Assembly (NCBI RefSeq): GCF_000142905.1
Contig: NW_013657677.1
Location: 372,001 to 436,000, forward strand
Direction: 5' to 3'
Length of the DNA stretch: 64,000 bases
DNA from: Thecamonas trahens ATCC 50062
Lineage: Eukaryota; Protista; Apusomonadida
This document shows positions 863 through 57,122 of the stretch, piece by piece. Both the position numbers and the translations under genes were made by a program. Numbering within the stretch: the first letter of the stretch is position 1; the number at the start of each line of letters is the position of its first letter. Under the pieces are notes generated by a model. The model was given only the letters and a program-made list of their open reading frames with translations, was not told the DNA's origin and did not search any database.

Positions 863-2207
863 TTAGGCCTTGACATCGTAGGTGCGACGCCACATGTCGT
901 CGATGTTGGTGAGGTAGTAGGTACCCGGGAGGAGGTCATCGTGCGAGTCAGTGGGGTGTAGGGGGCGGAGCCGTGGGCAGCCTCGCGGAGAGCGAGCTTG
1001 GCGACAAACTCCTCGGGGGTGCGGACGGTGCGGGCGGCAAGGCGGGCAACGACGTCGGTCTTCTCGCGGATGGAGGCAAGCGAGCCCTTGACGGTGAGCG
1101 AGAAGAGCGAGGAGGCCATGCCGGAGCCGTAGGAGAACATGAAGATGCGCTTGCCGGCGAGGGCGTCGTCGTCGAGGTTGGCGATGAGCGAGAGGAGGCC
1201 GCCGTAGACCGAGGCGGTGTACATGTTGCCACAGAGCTTGGACATGGCGACCGAGGGGCCGACGACGCGCTCAAAGCGCTCGGCGTTGGGCTTGAGGAAG
1301 GCGGCGAGGATGCCCTTCTCGTACGAGTCAGCCTCGGCGACGGCGGCGGCGGTGACGAGCTCGGGGGCGTCGGCAAAGGCCTCTGGGTTGGTGCGCACGT
1401 CGTTGTAGAGGAAGCGCCCAAACGACTTGATGACAAGCTTGTTGAACGGGCAGTGGAAGGCGGCGTAGTCAATGGCGTTGATGTTGAACGGCTCGCCGGT
1501 CACCTTCTCAAACTTGGCCTTGTAGTTGTCGTAGCAGCGGTCGAGGGCGCGGAGGTAGCACTTGATGGTCTGCGGGCCGTCGACGGTCGGGTACTCGGAT
1601 GAGAGGTCGGGCTTGTAAAAGTCGTACGTGTGCTCAAAGTGCGAGGCGCGGAGCTTGGTGTCGAACACCAGCGGGGCGTTGGGCCGATGAGCATGGCGAC
1701 GGCGCCACAGCCACCGGTCGGGCGCGCGTTGCCCTCGGCGTACACCGCAATGTCACCGGCGACAACCAGGGCGTAGCGGCCGTCCCACGCCGACGACTCG
1801 ATCCAGTTGATCGAGTTGAAGAGCGCGTTGGTTCCGCCGTAGCACGCGTTGGTGGTGTCGATGCCCTCGACGTCATCGTTGCCGGACTCGGCAAAGAGCT
1901 GCATGAGGACCGACTTGACTGACTTGGACTTGTCAATGATGGTCTCGGTGCCGACCTCGAGCCGACCGATGTCAGAGTACGAGATGCCGTACTTGGCAAC
2001 GAGCGAGGAGACAACCGTCAGACAGATCGAATGGATGTCCTCGAGGTCACCAGTGAACGCCATGGCGGTTTGGCCGAGGCCAATGGTGTACTTGCCGGTC
2101 GAAGCGCCGTCGTGCTTCTCGAGCTCGGCCTGGTCGACACACGTGGCGGGGACGTAGAAGTCCATGGCCACAATGCCAACGTCTGAGGGGCGGGATGTCT
2201 CGGCCAT
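863..2207 (-). CDS. HMGCS: Hydroxymethylglutaryl-CoA synthase (two single-base frameshifts)
   Basis: Motifs [17 protein letters not shown], active-site NACYGGT, YDFYKP and GNMYTAS. Adding one C at 1681-1683 ([11 protein letters not shown]) and one at 953-956 restores the frame through [16 protein letters not shown] to TAA at 863-865. Confidence 0.93.
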
Positions 2208-25000: not shown

Positions 25001-28000
25001 AGCTCGGTGAAGCAGTGCTGTCCCGAGTGGCGTTTGCCTCTGCGCGCGCTGAGCTCAAGTGGTCGTCGCTGCGGCCGGGGCCGGCAACTAAGCTCTGGCT
25101 CAGTGCTCTTGACCATCTGCCACACCTGAAGACAGCAACGCGGCCAAGTGTTGTCCTAGTCTGGATCGACGCCTACGAGCTCGAAAGCGAGCTGATATGG
25201 TCGTCACTCACCCGGATCGCAGAGCTGTCTGGCGCGGCTCGTCGTGCCTATCACGACCGCCGCCGCGTGGTCAACACCGGAGAAAGCTTTGACATCGGCG
25301 AGCGTGTTGCCGACGATTCCCCAGCCTGTGGTATGTCCACGCCCACCACCTCGATCTCATCTGCAGTCACGTCGTGGATGGACCGTCACCGAACGGAGCG
25401 GCTAGAGCTTGTTCAGGTCGAGTTGCGACTGCGAGCGCTCTCGCTTGCAGTGGTCACGCCACCTTCGCTCAGCGTAGCCAGCTTTGTTTCCGCAGTCGAG
25501 CCGGACGGATTGGCCGGGCGCGTGTTTCTCGACGCTAACTTGCGCGGTCTCGAGATGCGGCTGAGCCAGACTCGGCGGGGGGTGTCGCTCGGCGGTTCGT
25601 TGCACACACTCCGACTGGTAGATGCTCTTCTCACGCCGCCAGTCCCGCTTGTGGTGATGACCAAGGCGCGGGCTACAGGCGCGGATGGCGCTGGGTCGTC
25701 CAGTGTCGAAGCGTACGCCACGGTTGCGTATGATGCGACCGACGAGGTGCCGACGTCAACTATCACTGCGGGGTGCATCGCCCCGTCGCGGGTGGTTCTG
25801 GCGCCAGAAGCTCTCGTTCATCTCGGTGCCATGGGCGAGGAGCTACACAAGCTCTCGCGAGCGTGGACAGGGGCTGCTACAAGCGAGGAAGCCGGCGTGC
25901 AGTCAAGCGCTGAGATCGAGCAGGTGCCGGAGCCGGCGGCGCAGGTTGGCAAGGTCATCTTCTCTCTGCGAATTCAGTCTCCAATCGTCATTGTGCCACC
26001 ACCATCACTCGCTGGTGGGCCGCTGCTCGCGCTGAACATGGATGTGTTTCAGGCGGAGGGAAGCGCGTACGGCGCGATGAACGACCTGGTCTTCTCCACC
26101 GATGCCGCGCAAGTCGTCTTTGTGGCGAATGGCGACTGGATTGGCCTCACCAACTGGTCGTGGGCGCTGGACCACCAGCTTGCGCTACCGTCGTACCTCC
26201 ATGTCCTACCGTGTGCACAAGCGCAGGCCAAGATCCAGACCCGTGCCGGATCGGAGCCGCGGCTGGAAGTGGGTGTGACCCAGGGCGGACGCGAGATCGT
26301 GAGCATGCACCTCTGTCCCGAGCTCTTGTCGTTTGTCACTGATCTTCGGCGGCGGCTAGAGTGCGTGCCGGAGCTCGGCGTCGCCCGCGGAAGGCAGGCC
26401 GGCGACAGCGAGATGCGAGTGCCTGGCGAGAGCGAGCGGATGCAGTTTGCTGAGCTTGCGCGGTGGCTCTTTTCACGCCGGAGCATCTCGTGCTCGACGC
26501 GTGGCAGCCGGCATGGAAACTCAAGGCTACGTTTCCGTATGGCCTGCGAATGCAGCTGTTCCGGTCGGCAGCGTTGATGAAAGCCGCCTGCCAGGCAGAT
26601 CGACCGGTTGACGCCCCTGAAGTGCTCGCGCTTGTGGTGGCGACAGCCAACGTCGAGGTCCGGGTCGAGGCAGCGAGCAACACCCACCGGTGGAGCAACA
26701 TTGGCCCGTACTTTGTGCTGCGGCGGCGGCGGATCGAGATTGACTGCGGCGAACTTCAAGTTGACAACTACTTTGCGTCGAACCACCACAAGCCGGTCAT
26801 TCAGTCGCACCACTCGCTGCCGGTGCAGGCGGTGATCTCGAGCTTCTCGCTCGAGCCGACCCAGGCAACGAGGTTGGTGATGCGGATGTCGGCGCAGCGT
26901 GAGCCGTCGCCGACGTGGCAAGAGCGCTTCCGGCTTTTGCAGGATATCCGATCGGGAGTGGTGTTTGGCGAGGCGACGGTTGCCCTTCAGGGTCGATTCA
27001 TGCTTCACTACCGCAAGAGCGCGGTCGACGACTTGCGGCGGTTCATCAACTCGTCGCTGCTGCCAGCGATGCAGATGCCGAGCGCAACATGGCGCGGCGA
27101 TCGGATGTATGGCCTCGCGCGGGGCGTTCAGCCGCTGCTCTACTTTCACACGCTGCGATCGTCGGAACTTGACGCCACTCTCAACCTCGAAGCCGTGCGA
27201 ATGGTCGTCAACGCCAACGTGCGCGACTTTCAGCTCAGTGTCCCGCCGCTTGCCGAGACCGAACTTGTAGTGTGTGCCGGCAACGTGGGCAGGCTCTTTC
27301 TTAACCACTACTTTTCGTCGGATACTGGGTCTGGAGTGTGGGCACAGGCAACCCGGCTGGCACAGGCGGGGTGGAGCCGTGTCAAGGGCTATGTGCCACT
27401 GCTTGATCCACAGATTCCAACGGTGCCGACAGCCGTCCTTGCGCGCGTGCCTCGCGGTGCCTCGCACTCGCCGTTTGTCACGATGGAGATCCGTGACGGT
27501 GACGGGCGGCTGTACCGCGACGACGATGAGGCGGGGAACGAGGTCAGCGATGGCGGCCTCGCTCGCGGCGATGCACGATTTGTGGACATCACGCCATGGG
27601 CCGAGGTGGTTGAGCTTCCCGGAGCCGAGGCCGAGGCCAAGGCATTTGCTGCGGTGCTCTATCCCGACTTGGACCGCGCTTGGCACGGCCGGGCCGAACC
27701 GTGCACCTTTATCATTGATCTCGGCATGCAAGTAGTGGTGGCACAGGTGGACATCCGCAACGCACGGGGGGTGACTGGCGCGGAGCGTGGGGCCCGGCGA
27801 GTCAAGATTGCGCTTGCCGTCGATCCAGAAGGCCCATGGCTCCAAGCGGTCGACGACGAGCTGCGATATCCGGGGAGCGAAGCCACCGACGCTCTCCCGC
27901 TGCACTCGTTCCGGGTGCTTGTCAATCCCAGCGGCGGCGCGAGGTTTGTCCGCGTTGCCATCGAGACGTGGTACGAGATCGGGCCGGGCCTCACGCTGCT

Positions 28001-32176: not shown

Positions 32177-35100
32177 CTAGCGTGGCGGCGGCGGTGGGCC
32201 CGGTTTGTCCTCTTTGAAAGCGGCATGGACGAGGTTCTGGACGTAGTTGAGCGAGGTGTGGAAGACGTCGACGTAGACGTCAAGGGCACCGTTAGCACGG
32301 AGTTTGATGGTGCCCTTGTCAAGGTACTTGAGGATGACGTCCACGTTGAGGCCAGTGATGGTCCCGTGGGTCCTCGGTGAGATCCAAGTCGACGACGCTG
32401 GGATGGTCCACTGGCTTTCTGCCGTGAGCGAGATGTTGACGATGGCGACCTGGGTCTTGCCCTGCCAGATGGTAAAGTTGCCTGCGCGCATGGCGAGCGA
32501 CGACGGGTACGGATTGACCATTTCGAGGATGAGGTCAAAGGAGCGCGAGCCTTCGGCGAGCTTAATAAGGTTGATGTGGAGGTAGGCAAAGTCGATGAGC
32601 GGGACCTTGTTGGCTGGAATGATGGCGGAGGTGGACCAGATCTTGCAAGCGGGAACAAGATACGGAATGTTTGTGCCGTTGGCGTTCGAGGCGACACTGA
32701 CAGTGATGTCCGAGCCCGAGACGTAGTTGGAGAGGAACTCGACACCAACCTCGGGTGCATCGGCAGGAGCAGTGTAGAGCGCGACGACGTTGAACGTGTT
32801 CCATGCATTCGAGTCGAGCCAGAACTTTTCAAGAACGGCCGATGCCATGATCACGCCCTTGTAGCCGACGTAGAGGACAAGCCTCCCGAGGTGACCGCCA
32901 GCGGTCGACGGGTTGTAGATGCCAAGGTCGAGCTTGATGGTGAGCTGGTTGTGGGAGACCGCGGTGTCAAGGATGGCAGAGCGGACGTCGATGGGAGGGT
33001 GGGAGAAGCCGGCAGCGCCGAGCAGAAAGACTGGCTCGTCGACCGGGAGCGCCGAGAGGGTGACGTTGCCAAACGGAGTTTCCGCCGCAACCGAAGCGGT
33101 GCCGACCATACGAATGGATGTGTTGGCGTGGAGGAGCAAGTCGTTAATGAGGAGCGAAAAGGTGGGCCCGAGGCGACGGTGAGGGGCGTGTGATCAAACG
33201 AAACAACAAGCGTTCCGGCGGCCTGAGATGAGACGGCGGGCGTCCAGGGGACAGCAGCCGAGCCGAGAGCCGAGCCATTGACAAAGATGGTAAAGTCGAG
33301 GGCGAGGGCCGAGATGTCGAGGGTGATGTGAAAGGCACAGGCCCAGATGGCGAGGGCAGTGCCGGCGACGGTGGGCGAGGCAACCGGGAAAACGTCAAAG
33401 TTGAGGCGCTTCATGGCGATACCGTGGATGACCGAGTCGTTGGACGGTGGGAGCGTGACCGGAATGGTGAGCGAGGTGATGACGGAGCGGAGCCAGGCGG
33501 CGGACGTGGTGCCCGAGGTGCCGCGGACGACAAGCGAGGCGTTGCGCCCGGAGAGATACTTGGAGATGGTGTCCGATGCAGCTGGTAGGGCGGACGAGTG
33601 AGGATCAAAAACGCCAGTCATGGACAGTGCGTTAGGTCCGGGGGTCATGGCGAGAGAGCCGACCGTGACTGAGCCTAAGCGGGCGCCGGAAGGGTGGAAG
33701 ACACCGAGGTCGACCGAGCCGAGATCAAACGAGGCGACAGAGGGGTTGGTCAGCTCGGCATCAATGTCAAGCATCACACCGCCGGTCGGCGCATTTCCAG
33801 GCAGACTAAAGGAGATGACGCGGGTCGCGCCTGGAGCAGTAAAGCCGCTAAAGCCAGTGAGAGGGATGGCGACGTCAAACGGGAGCGATGCGAGGATCAT
33901 GGTACCGGCGGCGAGGGTGGCGTTGACCGAGGCGGTGCCGGTGAGTGTGAGCGAGATTTGTGGCGCATCGACAAAGCAGGAGACCCAGGCGGCAAAAGCT
34001 GTGCCGTCCGAGTGGAGCGGGAAGATAAGTGAGGTAGCGATGTCCAAGGCAACCGTGGTGGGGTTGGGCATCGCAGTCGGAGTCCATGGCGTGGTGAGAG
34101 TGCCGAGGACGGTGCCAGAGGCGTCGGTGAGCGCAGCTGTAAAGGTGGCGGCATGAACAGTGCACGGCGAGTTTGCGCCGAGCGGGTTGACAATGGCCAT
34201 CGAGGCGGCGGCGTTGAGTGCGACGGCGGTGTTAGGGCAGCGGCGTCGACGCTGACTGCGAGCGAGGAGTAGGTGACGCCGGCGATGAGTGCTGTCTTGT
34301 TACCGATGAGCAGCGTGTCGATGCTGAGGCCATGCAGGGCGTCGTTGTAGAGATGCTGCGAGCAGACGATGCCTGTCGAGGCGGCGCGCGATGAGACGGT
34401 GACGTTGTCGCCGCGGAGGTAGGCCGAGATGACCTCGGCGCCGAGCACGGTGTCTTGCGGGTTGAAAACGCCGGAGAGTGCGACGTGGTTGTAACTGTGG
34501 GCAACGAGGACAACGTTGCGAACAACAACGTGACCCATGAGCACATCCTGGTAGTAGATGCCAAAGAAGAGGTCGCCGAGCGGGTCGATCGTGACGACCG
34601 ACGGGTTGTAGATGTTGATGACAAGGTTGAGGACGACGGCGTGTGGCGTGGAATGGTCCATGTCAAAGACAAGCATGGAAACGTCTGCAAGGCCACCAAA
34701 GGCCGGCAGCGTGATATCCTTAGTCAGAGAGATGGAGCGGCAGTAGAGGCCGGCGAGAACGCAGACACGCGGGGTGCCGGCGACTTGCCACACGACCGCC
34801 GAGTCGTTGACGAGCGCCTGGCCAAAGGCGGAGAAGACGACCGGGTCGGGCACCAGCGTGTCTGTGCGCTCAACGACGGCAGCACCGCCCGAGACATGTA
34901 CATCGCCGACGTCAAGGTCGCCAAGGTGGCTGCCGCGAAAGGCGATGGCGAGGCGGAGGCCGTGAAGGGTGGCCGGGAAGCTCCCCGCATGCGAGAGGCG
35001 TGCGGTGTAGGCAACAACGACCGAATCGTTCTTTGGCTGCGAGAGCGAGACGGCCGAGATGTCGAGGCAAGAGCCGGCGACGGCGGCGTGCATGGCGTGC

Positions 35101-35686: not shown

Positions 35687-37065
35687 ATGGCCATGGCGGT
35701 CTGTCGTCTCTCAGACTCGCTGGTTGATGAGCTGCTGCAGGTGGCGGCCGAGGTGGGGAGCAGCACGGTGTGCGACGCCAAGGTGGCGGCGGCGCTGGAC
35801 AAGGCCGACGGCCTGTCACGCTTTGCCGACGCCTTTGCCTTTCCCACGCTGCATCTCGAGGGCGAGAATGCGTGCGAGGACGGACGTCAGGCAGTGTATC
35901 TGTGCGGCAACTCGCTCGGTCTCATGCCGCACAAGGCGCGCGAGTACGTCAACGAGGAGCTCGAGGCATGGGCCAAGTCGGGCGTCCGCGGGCACCACGA
36001 GGGCAAGCGGGCGTGGCTGTGGATCAACGAGCGGGTCACCGACGGTGCGGCGCGGCTGGTCGGTGCTAAGCCGATCGAGGTCGAGGTCATGAACTCGCTG
36101 ACGATGAACCTCCACGTCATGATGGCACCATTCTACCGGCCGACCGCGACCCGGTACAAGATCATGTACGAGGCCAAGGCCTTCCCGTCCGACTCGTATG
36201 CGTTTGCTTCGCAGGTGCGCATGGCCGGCTTTGATCCGGCCGACGCGCTCATTGCTGTCGCGCCGCGCGACGGCGAGTACACGCTACGGACCGAGGACAT
36301 CGAGGCCGCCATCGCCGAGGCCGGCGACTCGCTCGCGCTCGTCTGCTTCTCGGGCATCCAGTACTACACCGGCCAGCTGTTTGACATGCCGGCCATCACC
36401 AGGGCCGGACACGCTGTCGGTGCCAAGGTCGGCTTTGACCTCGCGCACGCAGTCGGCAACGTCGAGCTGCGGCTGCACGACTGGGGCGTCGACTTTGCGG
36501 CGTGGTGCCACTACAAGTACTGCAACTCGGGCCCGGGCGCCATTGCCGGAGCGTTTATCCATGAAAAGTACGCGCACGACGCCGAGCTTCACCGCATGGC
36601 CGGCTGGTGGGGTCACAACAAGGCCGAGCGGTTCCTCATGGAGCCCGAGTTTGTGCCTGATCCAGGCGCCGCCGGCTTCCAGGTCTCCAACCCGCCGGTC
36701 CTGCAGACGGTTGCCGTTGAAGCATCACTTGAGATCTTTGACGAGGCAACGCTGCCGGCTCTCCGTGCCAAGGCTCTCCGGCTCACCATGTTCCTCGAGC
36801 TGGCGCTCGAGTCGGCGCTCGGCTCGGACCATGTTGTCTCCATCACGCCGGCGGACCGAACGCCCGCGGCTGCCAGCTCTCGCTCCAGTTCACCAAGCCG
36901 GTCGAGGCCGTCCATGCCGCACTCGAGGCCGCCGGCGTCTATTGCGACGTCCGTAAGCCCGACGTCATGCGCATCGCCCCGGTCCCGCTCTACAACTCGT
37001 TTAGCGACGTCTTGCGGTTTGTCGAGCTCCTGGCGGCGGCTGTCAAGTCGGAGGCGGATGTGTGA
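35687..37065 (+). CDS. KYNU: Kynureninase (one frameshift)
   Basis: Motifs YLCGNSLGL, MNSLTMNLH, AFPSD, QYYTGQ, FDLAHAVGN, WCHYKYCNSGPG and GWWG. Adding one C at 36856-36857 restores ADPNARGCQLS..RIAPVPLYNSF, ending at TGA 37063-37065. Confidence 0.95.
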
Positions 37066-37094
37066 GCGCGTTTACTAAACAGGTCCGGACTTGG

Positions 37095-50755: not shown

Positions 50756-52827
50756 ATGGGACAGAACCGCTCCCGTCCCAAGGCAGACAATGAGTGTACG
50801 CACACCGCAGCCGCCTGCAAACTTCAGCCGTCGCCCTCCACCCTCTCCTCCCTTCCCGGCACATGTGCTGCGTCGGTGACGCGTGCATGTGACTGCGCCC
50901 CCCCCCCTTGCGACATTCACAGGCACAGACACAGACACACACACACACACACTCTCACTCACTCACTGCTGCCCACTCCCACCATCCACCTACTCTTGCA
51001 GTGGCGCAAGAGTTTGCCACCCGGTTCGTCCGCGGGTGGAGGACCGAGTCCAAGGCGCTTGCTGTGCCCGGCAGGAAAGAGCTGGTGGAGGCGGTGGTCG
51101 ACGTTCTCAAAGCCGTCCCGCGCGAGCATGCAGTGCTGGAGCTCTCGTTTGCCTGCATCCAGTTTGATCCTCCGGCGTGGACAGCGCTGGTGGGTGCGGC
51201 GACGGCTTCGCGCGGGCTCTCGCAGTTGGTGCTGGCTTCAAATGGGCTTTCAGCCCGCCACGCGCCGGCGCTGGCCGGTCTCGTTGTTCAGGCGCCGAGT
51301 CTGCTGCAGCTCTCGCTTGAAGGCAACAGGCTCGGGCTCGACGGCCTCGCACAGGTGCTGCGGGTTGTGCCGATGGCGCGCATTCTGCGGGATCTCAACA
51401 TCTCGGCGTGTGTTGTCCGCGGCGAGTGCGGCGACGAGCTGGTCGACCTGCTTGTCGAGGCCTACGCCGGCTCTAGCACGTTGGAGATGGTGGCCATGCG
51501 CGAGTGCAACGTCTCTTGGCACGGCTTTGCCAAGCTCGAGGCTGCACTGGATGTCATCCCGCAGATCTCGTACGTCGACTTGGTCGATAACCCGCTGTCG
51601 GGCGTCAACCGCGAGCGACGCGTCGCCTTTGCGGCCGCCCTCGAGCGCAACGCCGCGGTATGGGGCGTTGTCAAGGGCCTCTTTGATGCGATGTACGTCG
51701 AGATCGGCGCCAAGCGGCGGGCGTCGTTTGCAGCGAGCCAGATTCGGCCAGGGCGTTCGGTGTCTGTTGTCGACGAACAACCAGAGCGTGACTTTGCGGC
51801 GCAGTCGGTGTACAAGAGCTTAACGCCCGGCCAGCGCCTTATTGGGCGCAGCGGCACGCCGGCCACCGTCGCGGTTGCCCCCGACGTGCCCGATGCATTG
51901 CCCAACGTGAATGACCCGCGCGAGCTGGAGGCTTCGTTTGCCTCGCCGGCGCTGACGCTCTTTGCCTACGACATGCAAGGTCGGCGGCAGGAGATGGAGG
52001 ATTCGCTGGTGACGGTCTCGGGCTTTGGAGGGAGCGAGGCCGTCGACGTACTTGGCGTGTTTGACGGCCACGGCTCGACCGAACCCTCGCGCTACGCCAC
52101 CCGCAACCTCCTGCCGCTTCTTGCGCGCGAGCTGGCGCAGGCTGCTGCTGGTCCGTCAGCCGGTGCAGCGGATGACTCGGCCACAGTGACGACCGGGCAG
52201 ATGCGGTTTGCGCTCTCGTCGACGTTTGTCGCACTCGACAAGCTTATGACGCCGTGGGCGGTCTACTCTGGCACAACCGGCTTAGTGGTGGCGCGGGTTG
52301 GCCGCGCGCTCGTCACCGCCAACGCCGGCGACTCGCGGGCGGTCCTCGGTCTTGCTGACGGGAGTGCGATTCGGCTCTCGGAAGACCACAAGCCCGAGCT
52401 CGCATCGGAGAAGAGTCGGATCGAGGAGGCCGGCGGCTTTGTAGAAGCCGGCCGGGTGAACGGACGGCTCGGTGTGGCCCGCGCGCTCGGCGACGGTCTC
52501 TACGGCGACGCCGTCACCGCGCAGCCGGGCGTGACTGTCACATCGCTCGAGCCAGGCGTGCTGTGTGTCATTCTCGCATGCGACGGCGTGTGGGATGTGC
52601 TGTCGGACACCGCGGCGGTTGGCATTGTGAGCCGAGTCCTTGCCGCCGACGGTAGCAGCAAGCGCAACCCGGCCGAGGCCCTTGCTCGTGCCGCATACGT
52701 CTCGGGCTCGATGGACAACATCAGTGTGCTTGTTGGCGTGTTTAACGATGTAGCGGCGACAACGGCGAAGCCGGCGACGCCGACGACCGAAGCTGGCTCA
52801 CCGGCTGCGGAGCCGTGCCCGACGTGA
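50756..52827 (+). CDS. LRR (RNI-like) + PP2C protein phosphatase, possible N-myristoylation, 2 exons
   Basis: Exons 50756-50795 and 51002-52827 (GTACGC..ACTCAC..CAG intron). LRRs LVLASN, LSLEGN, LNISAC. PP2C motifs GRRQEMED, VFDGHG, ANAGDSR, ARALGD, ACDGVWD and DNISV. Confidence 0.88.
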
Positions 52828-54468
52828 CCCGCAAGACGTGCTTGACGACCGAGGCGCGCGGCCGTGGCCGTGTTGCCGCCGCTGCTGCCGCCGCCGCGTT
52901 CTTGCCCAAGACGGGCTGTGAGACTGAGCGGAGAGGGTCGCCACGCGGCAACGGTGACGGCGACGACGCTCGCGGCGGCGACTCTGACTGCGAGCGCGAC
53001 CCAGATCCAGACCCAGATCCCGAGCCCGACCGTGACTCCAGCCTCGAGCCCAACCCGGATCCCGACCGCAAACCCGACCGCAGACTGGTTCTGCGCCGCT
53101 TGGGTGAGCCCGGACTCGAACCCGAGCCAGAGCCAGATCCCGTCCCCAAGCCCGAGCCCGAGCTTGGGTGTAGTGACCTGGAGTTGCCTTTGGCCCGCCG
53201 CCGCTTGCGCAAGCGGCGGCGCGGCGAGTTGACTTTGCCCGCTGCTGCCGCGATGGGCGCTGCCTGCAGCATCCAACGGCCGACGCTTGGCGAGTAAGCG
53301 ACGAGATCAAGGTCGCGTAGGTTGTGCATGACGGCCAGTCCTTGGTCCTTGGTCCGCAAGCCGAGATGGTCTTGCAGCACGCGCCGCGAGACATGGTCGC
53401 TGCCTGCGCGTAGCTCTGCAGCAAGGAACGCGACGGCTGCGGCGAGCTGGGCGTCGCTGCGCGGGTTGTCCGACGCTGTGTCGGCACCCGGCGGGGTGGG
53501 CGGCGGCGGCGTGACCCGCTTGGAGCCGCCAACAATGCGTGGGCCAGCTGTGCGGGCGGCGTCGTCGAGACGGGCGAGCTCGGCCTCCAGCGCCGCGTTC
53601 TCGCGCTCGAGCCGGCGAGTGTCGGCCTCGAGCGACGACAGCTCGTCGCGCTCCGACTCGGGACTGGGGCGAGGCCGTGGCGGCTGCGGCAACGGTGATG
53701 GTGATGGCGACGGCGCCGAAGCGCCAAGCGGAACGTCAGCTGGAAAGACGCCGAGCTTGGCCGGCGCCACTGGCGGGGAGGCTTCGTCGTCAGCAAGCCC
53801 GTCGAGCACCGTCCGCATGCCCATGTCGTAGACATGGTGATGGGTCCGGACCGAGCCGACGGCAAACTCGAGCGGCTTGCGGGTGAAGAACATGGGCTCG
53901 TTGGCCGGAGCCGGCTGGAAGAAGAGCGGCTCGTAGTCGGGCGGCGCGGTGTCCGAGTAGATGACCCGCATCATGATGTAACGGTCGACGACGAGCGGCT
54001 GCAGAGTCTGGCACAGCAGCGTCAGCGTCCGCATCATGGTGATGGTGGAGAACTTGATCTCTTTTTGGTCTGTGGCGGGTGCGGGCGTCGCGGCGTCGTA
54101 TCGCCTGATGCCGCAGAGACAGAGACCGACGGCAGCCCGTCGGGGCCCGATGGGTACTGGACCTGAAAGTGGTACGACTCAACGAGCTCGTCCGAGGCGG
54201 CCTCGTAGACGCCGAGGATGATGTGATCGATGTAGCCGAGCTTGAGCGCCGGAAACACGCCCTGCTCCAGCCAGTTGCACAGTTCCTGAGCCTCATCAGT
54301 CGACGGCTTGAGCGACTTGATCCGCAGCCCATTGAGCGTTCGGTCGTAGAAGCAGTGCTCCGGAAAGAGCGAGCGGAGGTAGGCAATGGTGGAGATCGAG
54401 CAGCGGAGGAGATTGCGGACGAGGCAGAGTGACTCGGATGCGGTGACAGACTCGGTAGCGCTCGCCAT
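52742..54468 (-). CDS. HOP1: Meiotic HORMA-domain axis protein Hop1/ASY1/HORMAD (one frameshift)
   Basis: HORMA motifs ESLCLVRNLLRCSISTIAYLRSLFPEHCF, WLEQGVFPAL, VESYHF, MMRTL..LQPL, YSDTAPPDYEPLFF and VGSVRTHHH. Adding one A at 54062-54066 joins the two ORFs. Confidence 0.88.
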
Positions 54469-54754
54469 CGCCGCAGCCACAGATCGGACCATGACGAGGT
54501 GTGCCTCCGATGTAGATGTCGGCGCTGCAGCTTGCGTGCCCCTCGCTTACGTGGCTGCGGTTTTGACGACGCCCGCCAGAAGAAAGCCACCAGCGGTTGA
54601 TCGCCGTATTCCGAAAAAGGCCGTGGCGATCAGGCATTCTTTGCCAAGTTGGGAGGTGTGCCGTGCATGTTAAAACACAGCCATTCTCGCTTCCGTGCGC
54701 ACACCCCCTCCGCCTTTGATATCCACATCCTTTGATAACCAGCCATCAATAGTC
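54469..54754. promoter_or_regulatory. Putative bidirectional promoter shared by HOP1 and DMC1
   Basis: 286-bp spacer between divergent start codons; function inferred from geometry only. Confidence 0.55.
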
Positions 54755-55802
54755 ATGGCCGCGACTGAGGATATGGTGGTGGCGGTAGGCACCGAGATGG
54801 CGGCTCAGGCCAGCTACCAAGTCGAGGCCGAAGACGCATTCGATCCGATCGACCGGCTTCAAACGGTCGGCGTGTCTGCGACCGACGTGAAAAAGCTTGT
54901 GGCCGGCGGGTATGCAACAGTGCAGAGCGTGCTGATGTCGACGATGCGCGATCTGTGCGAGGTCAAGGGTGTGTCCGAGGCCAAGGCGCTTAAGATTGTG
55001 GAGGGCGCGGCGATGCTGTGCGAAAAGGGGACGGCGTTTGTGAGCGGCAAAGCGGCGCTCGAGGCGCGGGAGCACGTCGTTCGCATCTCGACGGGCTCGA
55101 GTGCGCTCGACACGCTGCTGGGCGGCGGAGTGGAGACCATGTCGATCACCGAGGCGTTTGGCGAGTTCCGGACGGGCAAGACACAGATCGCGCACGCTCT
55201 GCGTCACCTCGCAGCTTCCACTCGAGGCCGGCGGCGGCGGCGGCAAGGTGCTGTACATCGACACCGAAGGCACGTTCCGGCCGGGCCGCATTGTGCAGAT
55301 CGCTGAACGGTACGGCCTCGATTCCAACGACGTGCTGGAGAACATCCTCACCGTCCGGGTCTACACCCACGAGCAGCAGTACAACATGCTTGTCCGCGCG
55401 GCGGCGCTGATGGCCGACGACGGCTGCATTCGCATGCTCATCGTCGACTCGATCACGGCCCTCTTTCGCGTTGACTACACCGGCCGCGGCCAGCTCGCCG
55501 AGCGGCAGCAGAAGCTCAACCAGATGCTGGCACGGCTGACCAAGCTCGCCGACGAGTTCAACATTGCCGTCTTCATCACCAACCAGGTGGTGAGCGATCC
55601 GGGCGGCGGCGCCATGTTTGTCTCGGACCCCAAGAAGCCTGTCGGCGGGCATGTCCTCGCCCACGCCTCCACCACTAGGCTCTCGCTTCGCAAAGGCCGC
55701 GGCAACCAGCGAGTGTGTAAGCTCTTCGACTCGCCGTGCCTTCCCGATGCCGAGGCCGTGTACGAGATCGGGCCAGGCGGCGTCTCCGACCCACTCGACT
55801 GA
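54755..55802 (+). CDS. DMC1: Meiotic recombinase Dmc1 (2-nt frameshift at about 55193-55196)
   Basis: DMC1-type rather than RAD51-type residues: [35 protein letters not shown] and [15 protein letters not shown]. Confidence 0.92.
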
Positions 55803-55935
55803 CGGCAGCGAGGGCGAGGCAACAGCAGCCAGCCGGAAAACAAACCCACCTTACCAGCTCGGCCGAAAAACCTGGACGGATCTCGGGCTGGATCCGCAGC
55901 TCTCAAAGGCTCGCACTCTCATCTCCACCACAAAC

Positions 55936-57122
55936 ATGTACAAGACTCTGTTTGTCGTCCTTGTTGCGCTTGCGCTTGCGGCTTCGGCCTCTGCTGCCCC
56001 CACCGTCGTCTCCGACCTCGGAAACCCCACCACGTGCGAGCTCTGCGTCGGTACGGCCTCGGAAGCGTGCCGATTTCCCACCCATTTTTTGGCATGCGTT
56101 GCCGGGCGACGCCCGCCGCATTCGCCCACCCCCTCCTTTCCCCGTGCCCCCCCGCAATGCTCGCCCGCTCTGTCCCCTCTCCCGCTTGCCCTCCCTACAT
56201 CCTTGCTCACTCACTCCTTCCTGCTACACGTATAGAGTTTCTCTCGCAGGCCGAGAACGAGCTGCTCCAGGTACGTCGAGGGTCCTTCCAAGAAAGTCGG
56301 CAACCGACAGGCTTCACGAGCTTTCAGGCGCCAACCTCCCTTTTACGACCGCTTCCAACTTTTTCCCCCCTTTCCCATGCACAGCCACCTGGCGCAACTC
56401 ACTCTTCCCTCCTTCCCCCCCCCTCCTCTCCCCCCCCCTCTTGCCATCACTCCCACAGGCTATCCTCCAGCTCGGCATTGTCGACTCGTGCGGTGACCTC
56501 TGCGGCCTCCTCCCGTCCCGCCTCGAGGGCACCGTCTGCGACCTCCGTACGTGACGCAGGCGTGACTGCGCTGCACCTGTTGCTCCCCCCCCCCCTTCCA
56601 CCTCGGGCAGACTCACCGCTCCCCTCTCCCCCTCCCCCCCCCCCCCCACCCACCATAGTCTGCGACTACATCGGCGTGACCGAGTTTGTCAAGATCATCC
56701 AGGAGCACTCGCCGGACCCCATCTACGCCTGCCAGCTCCTCAAGCAGTGTTCGATCAACGACAACGCCAAGGCGAACATGATCGACTTTGTTGTCGCGCC
56801 CAAGGTCGGCCAGCAGGGCACGACCTTTACCTTTGGAGCCACGTTCAACGTGACCAACGGCCCGACCGGTGCTGGCGAGCTCGCGCTCGGCGTGCAGCCG
56901 CCGCAGGGCATGCCTTTTGGTGACGGTGCGGTCAACGACGGCATCCCCAACGGTGAGCACACCGTGACGTTCTCGCTCAAGGCCCAGCCCAACGAGCAGG
57001 AGCCGTTCTCGGCCGGCACGTACGAGGTCGAGTTTGCCGTGTGCAACGGCATTTGCGGCGCGACCAAGCCGCACTCGGCTGTCCTCGCCGTCGGCAAGGG
57101 CTCGTTCCGCATTGAGCAGTAA
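55936..57122 (+). CDS. Secreted countin-like saposin-B-domain protein, 4 exons
   Basis: Exons 55936-56050, 56236-56270, 56459-56546 and 56659-57122. Signal peptide followed by CELCVEF..GIVDSCGDLC..VCDLLCDYIGVTEF..PDPIYAC..CSINDNA, matching the Dictyostelium countin pattern. Confidence 0.8.

What the first reader, a model, noticed from the sequence alone, without database searches (positions are those of the whole stretch)
52742..55802. HOP1 and DMC1, two meiosis-specific genes, head-to-head across a 286-bp spacer
Seen: a HORMA-domain Hop1 gene (- strand, ATG 54468) and a DMC1-type recombinase (+ strand, ATG 54755) diverge from one short spacer. Unlike most divergent spacers in this window, it has no microsatellite or poly-G/C tract. 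Established: Hop1/HORMAD and Dmc1 are core meiosis-specific proteins acting in inter-homolog recombination. Inference: this is a co-regulated meiotic cassette on one bidirectional promoter, pointing to cryptic sex in this protist and giving a handle on its meiotic transcription motif.
Basis: partly seen in the sequence, partly recalled or inferred. Interest (0 to 1): 0.8.

Follow-up and report, generated by a model that had tools for sequence, protein, structure and literature searches.

The report
HOP1–DMC1 divergent pair in Thecamonas
Two meiosis-type recombination genes of the protist Thecamonas trahens do sit head to head on a 286-bp spacer, and that spacer carries a variant of a promoter word that marks about 100 promoters, many of them for DNA-recombination and repair genes; both genes are frame-broken in the reference assembly, and the public gene models hide the breaks.

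Summary
The window is Thecamonas trahens ATCC 50062. A HORMA gene (- strand, ATG 54468, stop 52742) and a RecA-type gene (+ strand, ATG 54755, stop 55802) diverge from a repeat-free 286-bp spacer.

- **Identity.** The recombinase is a DMC1 orthologue. All its best named hits are DMC1. It falls in the DMC1 clade (SH-aLRT 99) and carries the DMC1-specific L1 (E/Q/K) and L2 (P/G) residues. A separate RAD51 lies on another contig. The HORMA protein matches only meiotic HORMADs; MAD2 is a separate gene.
- **Frame breaks.** Neither gene is one open frame. HOP1 lacks 1 nt, like about 8 other breaks in the window, so this is probably an assembly error. DMC1 lacks 2 nt (CACAC read as CAC) just after Walker A. 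The public models bridge the breaks with 26- and 31-nt fake introns, and the DMC1 model loses Walker A.
- **Wild relative.** A 98.9%-identical metagenome contig has the same arrangement and an intact 349-aa DMC1.
- **Spacer motif.** The centre of the spacer holds CCGAAAAAGGCCGTG, one mismatch from a word whose 12-nt core occurs 118 times in the genome (control 3). The word lies upstream of HOP2, MND1, BRCA2, HROB, MCM8/9, FANCI, FANCM, RecQ, RAD9 and MAD2, but not SPO11.

Co-regulation is therefore plausible, but within a recombination/repair regulon rather than a meiosis-only one.

The parts
54037..54468 (-). HOP1 piece 1: N-terminal part of the HORMA domain (upstream reading frame)
   Evidence: Pfam HORMA E 8.7e-31, profile positions 1-111. 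PDB hits are only HORMAD1 (E 2.3e-10) and HIM-3. Window 54126-54478, which covers the first 114 codons, is 100% identical in the relative's contig L020.
54037..54175 (-). Zone where both HOP1 frames are open and 1 nt is missing. Candidate sites are the A5 run at 54066-54070 and the C4 run at 54142-54145.
   Evidence: The public model P0122 bridges the zone with a 26-nt GT..AG 'intron' (deduced from the sequence). Codon scores do not fix the exact site.
52742..54073 (-). HOP1 piece 2: C-terminal part of HORMA, a coiled-coil-like stretch, and an SG/SR-rich tail with three SQ sites; stop at 52742-52744
   Evidence: Pfam HORMA E 9.9e-17, profile positions 130-209. PDB hit is HORMAD1 only, E 1.2e-7. 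SQ sites at residues 361, 385 and 426 of this piece.
54469..54754 (.). 286-bp divergent spacer with no tandem repeats
   Evidence: Seven substitutions against L020 fall in 54479-54707; six of them lie in this spacer by the 54468 start, or all seven by the 54492 start. That compares with 3 in the 1050-nt DMC1 CDS.
54611..54625 (+). CCGAAAAAGGCCGTG, a one-mismatch (T11C) variant of the genome-wide promoter word CCGAAAAAGGTCGTG, lying at the centre of the spacer
   Evidence: Identical in L020.
54713..54741 (+). Two copies of CCTTTGATA(T/A)CCA, 16 nt apart, 14-42 nt upstream of the DMC1 ATG
   Evidence: The only exact copies in the window. Only about 2.6-fold over control genome-wide. Not found at other meiotic loci.
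54755..55195 (+). DMC1 piece 1: N-terminal HhH domain and Walker A ([12 protein letters not shown])
   Evidence: Pfam Rad51 E 1.7e-17 and HHH_5 E 9.7e-6. The best PDB hit is human DMC1.
55190..55196 (+). DMC1 frame break: the reference reads GCACG where the relative reads GCACACG (2 nt 'CA' absent); not in a homopolymer
   Evidence: The public model P0001 skips 31 nt here and loses Walker A.
55194..55802 (+). DMC1 piece 2: RecA core with L1 (LAERQQKL) and L2 (SDPGGG) loops; stop at 55800-55802
   Evidence: Pfam Rad51 E 4.9e-93. The best 120 hits are mostly named DMC1, and no canonical RAD51 is among them. Trees.

Best explanation
These are the Thecamonas trahens orthologues of HOP1 (the meiotic chromosome-axis HORMA protein) and DMC1 (the meiotic strand-exchange recombinase). 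They are transcribed divergently from one 286-bp promoter region. At the centre of that region lies a near-canonical copy of a 15-nt promoter word (consensus CCGAAAAAGGTCGTGRWW). The same word sits roughly 50-500 nt upstream of many recombination and repair genes, including the DMC1 cofactors HOP2 and MND1. The most likely mechanism (inferred) is that one still unknown DNA-binding factor switches on a recombination regulon and drives both genes of the pair from the shared site. The two frame breaks are defects of the reference sequence, or very recent lesions of the reference strain, not old decay. HOP1's break belongs to the assembly's common 'one base missing' class. DMC1's 2-nt gap is atypical, and the gene is intact in a wild relative. 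Shown: gene identities, layout, the breaks, the intact relative, the over-representation of the motif and its neighbours. Inferred: co-regulation, function of the spacer's variant site, a meiotic role.
For: - **Organism and public models:**
- **DMC1 identity.** The best 120 hits are mostly named DMC1 (61-70% identity), with no canonical RAD51 among them. In the 30-row tree it sits in a DMC1 clade of 17 rows (SH-aLRT 99). The own-genome C52 protein groups with fungal rhp51 and Brugia RAD51. Forcing it into the RAD51 clade costs 41.4 lnL, p-AU 0.0455.
- **Signature residues.** L1 reads LAERQQKL and L2 reads SDPGGG. The own RAD51 reads LSARQMHL and AQVDGA. These match the lineage-specific residues of PMC6719624 and PMC7809202.
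- **HOP1 identity.** PDB hits are only HORMAD1 and HIM-3. Atlas neighbours are HORMAD1/2, ASY1-like and fungal HORMA+PHD clusters. The genome's other HORMA gene is MAD2, E 7e-50.
- **Relative.** Contig L020 is 98.9% identical, has the same layout and encodes an intact 349-aa DMC1.
- **Frame breaks.** About 8 other direct frame switches in the window are all '1 nt missing'. Three were read by eye at short base runs, two of them inside recognisable conserved motifs.
- **Motif counts.** 95 sites with at most 1 mismatch against 6 for the control. The core AAAAAGGTCGTG occurs 118 times against 3. 55 of 62 sites are non-coding and 50 face a gene start.
- **Motif neighbours.** HOP2, MND1, BRCA2, HROB, STAG, Pol delta, a HhH-GPD glycosylase, a MutS homologue, RAD9, FHA-RING, FANCI, FANCM, RecQ, an SNF2 helicase, RecA, Zwilch, MAD2, MCM8 and MCM9.
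Against: - The spacer's copy differs from the canonical word at a well-conserved position (T11C). The C-variant core is not over-represented (4 sites against 5 for the control), so its activity is uncertain.
- No expression data could be reached.
- The DMC1 2-nt gap is unlike the other breaks and could be a real loss-of-function allele in ATCC 50062.
- The AU test is only marginal (p 0.0455) and used the simpler LG+G4 model.
- The pairing is absent next to DMC1 in Acanthamoeba, Balamuthia, Acrasis and one further long eukaryotic contig. No other apusomonad genome could be examined.
- About 40 motif neighbours have no Pfam hit or an unrelated function.
Confidence: 0.6

Rival explanations
1. DMC1 (and perhaps HOP1) is truly inactivated in the reference strain ATCC 50062. 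On this reading, a recent CA slippage deletion after Walker A truncates the protein, reflecting relaxed selection on sex in long clonal culture, while wild relatives keep the gene.
For: The 2-nt gap lies outside a homopolymer and is the only break of its kind in the window. A 98.9%-identical wild contig has the CA and an intact frame. The rest of the CDS shows no decay, with 2 synonymous and 1 non-synonymous difference, which fits a very recent event.
Against: The assembly is demonstrably rich in missing bases. At all three indels between the reference and L020, the reference is the shorter. No reads were available. HOP1's break fits the common error class.
Confidence: 0.35
2. The adjacency is incidental. 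Each gene has its own promoter, the central word serves one gene or neither, and there is no cassette.
For: The pairing is not conserved in four distant eukaryotes. Divergent pairs on short spacers are common in this compact genome. The spacer's motif is a non-canonical variant. A separate tandem CCTTTGATA pair lies next to DMC1 only.
Against: The chance of two core meiotic genes being neighbours is about 0.01 (inference). The chance of a 14-of-15 match to the word in 286 bp is about 1e-4 (from the control counts). The site is central and is kept in the relative.
Confidence: 0.2
3. The pair works in vegetative DNA repair rather than meiosis. It would be expressed with the Fanconi, BRCA2 and MCM8-9 repair program after damage or in S phase, so it says little about sex.
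For: The motif is shared with FANCI, FANCM, BRCA2, HROB, MCM8/9, RAD9, RecQ, Pol delta and MAD2. The three SPO11-like loci have no site nearby.
Against: DMC1 keeps the Dmc1-lineage L1 and L2 residues, and HOP1, HOP2, MND1 and SPO11-like genes are all retained. In studied eukaryotes these proteins act in meiosis (established knowledge). The same general recombination genes are also needed in meiosis.
Confidence: 0.25

Closest known systems
DMC1 (meiotic RecA/Rad51-family recombinase; human DMC1, yeast Dmc1, plant DMC1/LIM15)
   Same: HhH N-domain plus RecA core. Walker A is encoded. It carries the Dmc1-lineage L1 E/Q/K and L2 P/G residues. It sits in the DMC1 clade. The HOP2 and MND1 cofactors are present in the genome.
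   Different: The reference sequence is 2 nt short right after Walker A. The public model XP_013762486 lacks Walker A because of a fake 31-nt intron. It has a long stem branch (about 0.5-0.6) within the clade.
Hop1 / HORMAD1-2 / ASY1 / HIM-3 (meiotic axis HORMA proteins)
   Same: N-terminal HORMA domain, best matched by HORMAD1 and HIM-3. Long, low-complexity C-terminal tail with SQ sites.
   Different: No PHD or other Pfam domain was detected after HORMA. The closure motif was not identified. Sequence searches at database scale find no relative above threshold. It is 1 nt short in the reference.
Bidirectional promoters of DNA-repair gene pairs (known in animals, e.g. BRCA1-NBR2; stated from general knowledge)
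   Same: Head-to-head genes less than 1 kb apart, with related functions and a central shared element.
   Different: Both partners are meiosis-type genes. This pairing is not reported in the literature I could search.
Cell-cycle and repair regulon words such as E2F sites or fungal SCB/MCB boxes
   Same: A short word about 50-500 nt upstream of many recombination, repair and checkpoint genes, in either orientation.
   Different: The sequence (CCGAAAAAGGTCGTG) matches none of these consensus sites by eye. The replicative MCM loci checked lack it, while MCM8 and MCM9 have it. The binding factor is unknown.

Membership tests
DMC1 | Rad51/RecA core with Walker A and an N-terminal HhH domain | tested here: met
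   Pfam Rad51 on both pieces. HHH_5 scores 26.4 bits, just under its cut-off of 27. GEFRTGKT is readable at 55160-55183.
DMC1 | Groups with DMC1, not RAD51, in a tree that holds the genome's own RAD51 | tested here: met
   DMC1 clade with SH-aLRT 99; forcing RAD51 placement costs 41.4 lnL, p-AU 0.0455 (marginal). The 67-row tree agrees, with supports of 81-90. Clade names.
DMC1 | Dmc1-lineage residues in L1 (E, Q, K) and L2 (P, G) | tested here: met
   The window reads LAERQQKL and SDPGGG. The own RAD51 reads LSARQMHL and AQVDGA. Definitions from PMC6719624 and PMC7809202.
DMC1 | One uninterrupted reading frame | tested here: not met
   The reference is 2 nt short at 55193-55196. This is met in the relative's contig L020 / P0121. 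It bears on function in this strain, not on ancestry.
DMC1 | Meiosis-specific expression | not testable with these tools
   No transcript data could be reached.
Hop1/HORMAD | N-terminal HORMA domain | tested here: met
   Pfam HORMA profile positions 1-111 and 130-209 over the two pieces.
Hop1/HORMAD | Closer to meiotic HORMADs than to MAD2, REV7 or p31comet | tested here: met
   PDB hits are HORMAD1 and HIM-3 only. Atlas neighbours are HORMAD1/2, ASY1-like and HORMA+PHD clusters. MAD2 is a separate gene. No tree was built, because no named relatives passed the thresholds.
Hop1/HORMAD | C-terminal closure motif that binds its own HORMA domain | not tested
   The tail is low-complexity and no alignment partners were available.
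Hop1/HORMAD | Central chromatin-binding region (PHD / winged helix), present in many but not all members | tested here: inconclusive
   Pfam finds nothing beyond HORMA in the 443-aa piece. The structure was not modelled.
Bidirectional-promoter gene pair | Head-to-head starts less than 1 kb apart | tested here: met
   286 bp.
Bidirectional-promoter gene pair | Shared cis-element and co-expression | tested here: inconclusive
   A central 14-of-15 match to a regulon word, but it is the non-canonical variant. No expression data.
Bidirectional-promoter gene pair | Arrangement conserved in relatives | tested here: inconclusive
   Kept in a 98.9%-identical contig. Absent in four distant eukaryotes. 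The closest other DMC1 contigs are too short.

The most novel reading that the evidence does not exclude
CCGAAAAAGGTCGTG is the binding site of a dedicated, still unknown regulator of a recombination regulon in apusomonads. That regulon would cover meiotic strand exchange and axis (DMC1, HOP1, HOP2, MND1), BRCA2, HROB-MCM8-MCM9 and the Fanconi genes. The HOP1-DMC1 pair would be its only bidirectional meiotic unit, and the reference culture strain would have just lost DMC1 by a 2-nt slippage. That would give both a switch to look for sex in the sister lineage of animals and fungi, and a case of sex being lost in culture.
Probability: 0.2. Interest if true: 0.7.

Novelty: new member of a known kind. 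Interest (0 to 1): 0.5.

Why it matters
- **Sex in apusomonads.** Apusomonads are close relatives of the animal and fungal lineage, and no sexual cycle is known for them (stated from general knowledge). A verified DMC1-HOP1-HOP2-MND1 set, plus a promoter word that ties these genes to BRCA2, MCM8/9 and the Fanconi genes, gives concrete reporters and a candidate site for finding the conditions and the factor that turn recombination on.
- **Gene inventories.** The public DMC1 model of this reference genome lacks its ATP-binding loop only because a frameshift was hidden by a fake intron. Inventories and alignments that use it are affected.
- **Assembly quality.** The window shows that single missing bases are frequent in this assembly.

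Tried and rejected
- **JGI metagenome scans for HOP1.** A 27-nt HOP1 word and the HOP1 HORMA piece both found nothing. No independent read of the HOP1 break was obtained.
- **Word-index searches for HOP1.** Two searches found only the public model itself.
- **First DMC1 tree.** It used three very long own-genome paralogues as outgroup and put the outgroup on the Thecamonas DMC1 branch. I treat this as long-branch attraction and replaced it with trees that have real RAD51 sampling.
- **AU test under the mixture model.** It did not finish in three runs, so I used a smaller set under LG+G4.
- **CCTTTGATA as a shared meiotic motif.** Absent from the HOP2, MND1 and SPO11 loci and only weakly over-represented.
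- **C-variant core as a motif class of its own.** Not over-represented.
- **Exact site of HOP1's missing base.** Codon scores do not decide it.
- **PDB search for the MutS neighbour.** No hit at E 1e-5, so it is not assigned to MSH4 or MSH5.
- **RAD51's promoter.** It lies in an N-run and could not be read.
- **Literature.** No paper was found on Thecamonas meiotic genes, on this pairing, or on frameshifts in this assembly.
- The pieces were searched separately, and full-length comparisons used the database proteins P0121 and P0122.
- **Human sequence.** No contig looked human.
Full report
**What is there.** The window is contig C3:372001-436000 of a 28.7-Mb assembly. The 100%-identical database proteins identify it as Thecamonas trahens ATCC 50062. 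On the - strand a HORMA-domain gene runs from ATG 54468 (or an upstream ATG at 54492) to a stop at 52742. On the + strand a Rad51-family gene runs from ATG 54755 to a stop at 55802. The spacer is 286 bp.

**Both genes are frame-broken in this assembly.** HOP1 reads in one frame down to a stop at 54034-54036, and then continues in the frame one base back, which is open from 54178. The overlap zone, 54037-54175, holds an A5 run (54066-54070) and a C4 run. Codon scores do not decide where the base is missing.

DMC1 reads ...[12 protein letters not shown] in one frame and TLCVTSQLP... in the next. The two codons CAC and ACG share 2 nt, so 2 nt are missing and there is no room for an intron.

The public models hide both breaks with tiny GT..AG 'introns':
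- P0122 (574 aa) skips 26 nt in HOP1.
- P0001 / XP_013762486 (338 aa) skips 31 nt in DMC1 and so lacks [13 protein letters not shown], the Walker A loop.

**An independent relative.** The 90% cluster of P0001 has a second member, P0121 (349 aa), from ENA assembly ERZ1643211.
- Its 2320-nt contig (L020) is 98.9% identical to window 54126-56440.
- It has the same head-to-head layout and the same 286-bp spacer.
- It reads CACAC where the reference reads CAC, which gives an intact DMC1 with GKTQIAHTLCVT.
- Differences: 7 substitutions between 54479 and 54707 (six inside the spacer by the 54468 start, seven by the 54492 start); 3 in the 1050-nt DMC1 CDS (two at third positions, one N to D); and none in window 54126-54478, which holds the first 114 HOP1 codons.
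- The substitution at 54479 would be non-synonymous if the ATG at 54492 were used. This mildly favours 54468 as the start.
- L020 stops before the HOP1 break, so that break has no independent read.

**How common are such breaks?** I ran a codon-usage frame path over the window. It finds about 8 other direct frame switches, and all are of the '1 nt missing' type. Three that I read by eye sit at short base runs. Two of them interrupt recognisable motifs: GAVAMLIGP|NAPLVFD, which looks like HMG-CoA synthase, and ITPAD..RGCQLSL, which looks like kynureninase. The third is at a T run at 26470.

HOP1's break fits this class, so it is probably an assembly error. DMC1's break is the only '2 nt missing' case and lies outside a homopolymer. 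At all three indels between the reference and L020 the reference is the shorter. I put a real lesion in the reference strain at about 0.35. Earlier notes of this scan report the same error class and the same fake-intron habit elsewhere in this genome, and I confirmed both here.

**DMC1 or RAD51?**
- *Named hits.* The best 120 word-search hits to the 202-aa core are mostly named DMC1, from plants, kinetoplastids, Amoebozoa, Heterolobosea, fungi and animals, at 61-70% identity. No canonical RAD51 is among them.
- *The genome's own RAD51.* A canonical RAD51 lies on C52 (429 bits to Pfam Rad51; 61% identical to the window protein).
- *First tree.* A tree rooted with three very long paralogues was misleading.
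- *Better sampling.* I used the one large HMMER search with the C52 RAD51 to obtain RAD51 and RadA representatives and named some of them (fungal rhp51, Brugia and Parastrongyloides RAD51, beaver DMC1).
- *Trees.* In the 67-row tree the window protein sits with an environmental protein (P0002) inside the group that holds all named DMC1, and C52 sits with the RAD51s. In the 30-row LG+G4 tree the DMC1 clade, including the window protein, has SH-aLRT 99. Forcing the window protein into the RAD51 clade costs 41.4 lnL, p-AU 0.0455.
- *Signature residues.* L1 reads LAERQQKL (E, Q, K) against LSARQMHL in C52. L2 reads SDPGGG against AQVDGA. These are the lineage-specific positions described in PMC6719624 and PMC7809202.
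- *Cofactors.* HOP2, MND1 and three SPO11-like matches exist in the genome.

**HOP1 or a mitotic HORMA?** Both HORMA pieces hit only HORMAD1 (E 2.3e-10 and 1.2e-7) and HIM-3 in the PDB. The ESM Atlas neighbours are HORMAD1/2 clusters by features. By structure they are an 'essential for meiotic synapsis' plant cluster (TM 0.86) and fungal and arthropod HORMA+PHD clusters. The only other HORMA gene found in the genome is MAD2 (E 7e-50). No PHD or other domain is detected after HORMA. The tail has three SQ sites. The closure motif was not tested.

**Synteny.** No HORMA gene lies within 10 kb of DMC1 in Acanthamoeba castellanii, Balamuthia mandrillaris, Acrasis kona or a 756-kb ENA contig. The closest environmental DMC1 contigs are 1.1-5.4 kb, too short to tell. 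The pairing is therefore lineage-specific as far as can be seen.

**The spacer and a regulon word.** Looking for spacer k-mers in the upstream regions of other meiotic genes gave CCGAAAAAG in both HOP2 and MND1. In context, HOP2 and MND1 share 18 nt (CCGAAAAAGGTCGTGTTT), and the spacer has CCGAAAAAGGCCGTG at 54611-54625, the centre of the spacer.

Genome-wide counts:

| Pattern | Sites | Control (pattern read backwards) |
|---|---|---|
| 15-mer (Y at position 11), exact | 20 | – |
| 15-mer, at most 1 mismatch | 95 | 6 |
| Core AAAAAGGTCGTG | 118 | 3 |
| C-variant core AAAAAGGCCGTG | 4 | 5 |

Of 62 distinct sites examined, 55 are non-coding and 50 face a gene start, at a median of about 280 nt from the predicted coding start. 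They occur in either orientation. Only about 18 nt are conserved, so this is not a mobile element.

Neighbours identified by Pfam or PDB:
- *Recombination and repair:* HOP1/DMC1, HOP2, MND1, BRCA2, HROB, FANCI, FANCM, a RecQ/BLM-like helicase, RAD9, a MutS II-III protein, an SNF2 helicase, a bacterial-type RecA, DNA polymerase delta, a HhH-GPD glycosylase, and an FHA-RING protein.
- *MCM8 and MCM9:* MCM8 has the word 142 nt upstream of its ATG. MCM9 has the core 54 nt upstream.
- *Cohesion and checkpoint:* STAG/SCC3, MAD2, Zwilch.
- *Sources:*.

That is 17-19 of about 63 loci. By my rough estimate, which rests on an assumed background rather than a measured one, about 3 would be expected. The rest are unrelated (kinases, calpain, an ABC transporter, ATG16, Rpb1 and others) or have no Pfam hit.

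The word was not found near:
- *Replicative MCMs.* Four of the five loci have no site nearby. For the fifth (C57), only the 15-mer search is complete, and its nearest site is about 130 kb away.
- *SPO11-like loci.* None of the three has a site with at most 1 mismatch nearby. SPO11c has only a 2-mismatch match inside its locus.
- *RAD51.* Its promoter lies in an N-run and could not be read.

**Caveat on the spacer's copy.** It carries C at position 11, where T is nearly invariant, and the C-variant core alone is not over-represented. Full 15-mers varied only at position 11 (one C, three G) are still more frequent than chance would give, and the copy is kept in L020. Its activity is plausible but unproven. 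A separate tandem pair of CCTTTGATA just upstream of the DMC1 ATG is unique to this locus and unexplained.

**Reading.**
- The layout is real and unlikely to be chance.
- The spacer does give a motif, but that motif belongs to a wider recombination, repair and chromosome-surveillance regulon, not a meiosis-only program.
- The reference strain's DMC1 may or may not be functional.
- Sex in this protist remains an inference from the toolkit.

**Limits.** I had no expression data, no reads and no second apusomonad genome. About 20 motif sites were not annotated. Gene starts come from a simple codon-usage path.

Noticed in passing
window 1500-1752, 26454-26577, 32851-33193, 36742-37078: Further '1 nt missing' frame switches inside genes, for example what looks like HMG-CoA synthase at about 1680 and a kynureninase-like gene at about 36860. 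The first three sit at short C or T runs; at the fourth a short C run was only inferred. They look like assembly errors that the public models probably hide.
   Followed up: partly
genome-wide; e.g. G000:C42:304273-304287 (MCM8), C24:235179-235190 (MCM9), C22:9066-9080 (BRCA2), C42:1966-1980 (HROB), C9:183692-183706 (FANCI), C6:503981-503995 (FANCM): The promoter word CCGAAAAAGGTCGTG (core: 118 sites against 3 for the control) marks a set of recombination, Fanconi and checkpoint genes. The factor that binds it is unknown. Many neighbours have no Pfam domain and could be unrecognised repair or meiosis genes.
   Followed up: partly
window 54713-54741: Two copies of CCTTTGATA(T/A)CCA, 16 nt apart, lie just upstream of the DMC1 ATG. 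It is the only place in the genome list where two copies lie close together. The sequence resembles an HMG-box/TCF-type site by eye (from memory, not tested).
   Followed up: partly
window 52742-52827: The HOP1 stop (52742) and the stop of the convergent PP2C-like ORF (50908-52827, + strand) overlap by 86 bp, if both ORF ends are real.
   Followed up: no
L009 2487-3729 (G000:C52, upstream of RAD51): The RAD51 gene's 5' end and promoter run into a 1.2-kb N-run, so its first exon and any motif there cannot be read.
   Followed up: no
L100 1994-3013 (G000:C71): A bacterial-type RecA (Pfam RecA, 423 bits), presumably organellar, lies about 480 nt downstream of a one-mismatch copy of the regulon word.
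   Followed up: no
G000:C74:4882-5810: Seven copies of CCGACAAAGGTCGTG occur at 79-319-nt spacing. This is a tandem array that carries a one-mismatch version of the word.
   Followed up: no
window 56084 and 56128 against L020 1962 and 2007: Two more single-base length differences at T and C runs, in what is probably an intron of the downstream secreted-protein gene. The reference is the shorter in both.
   Followed up: partly
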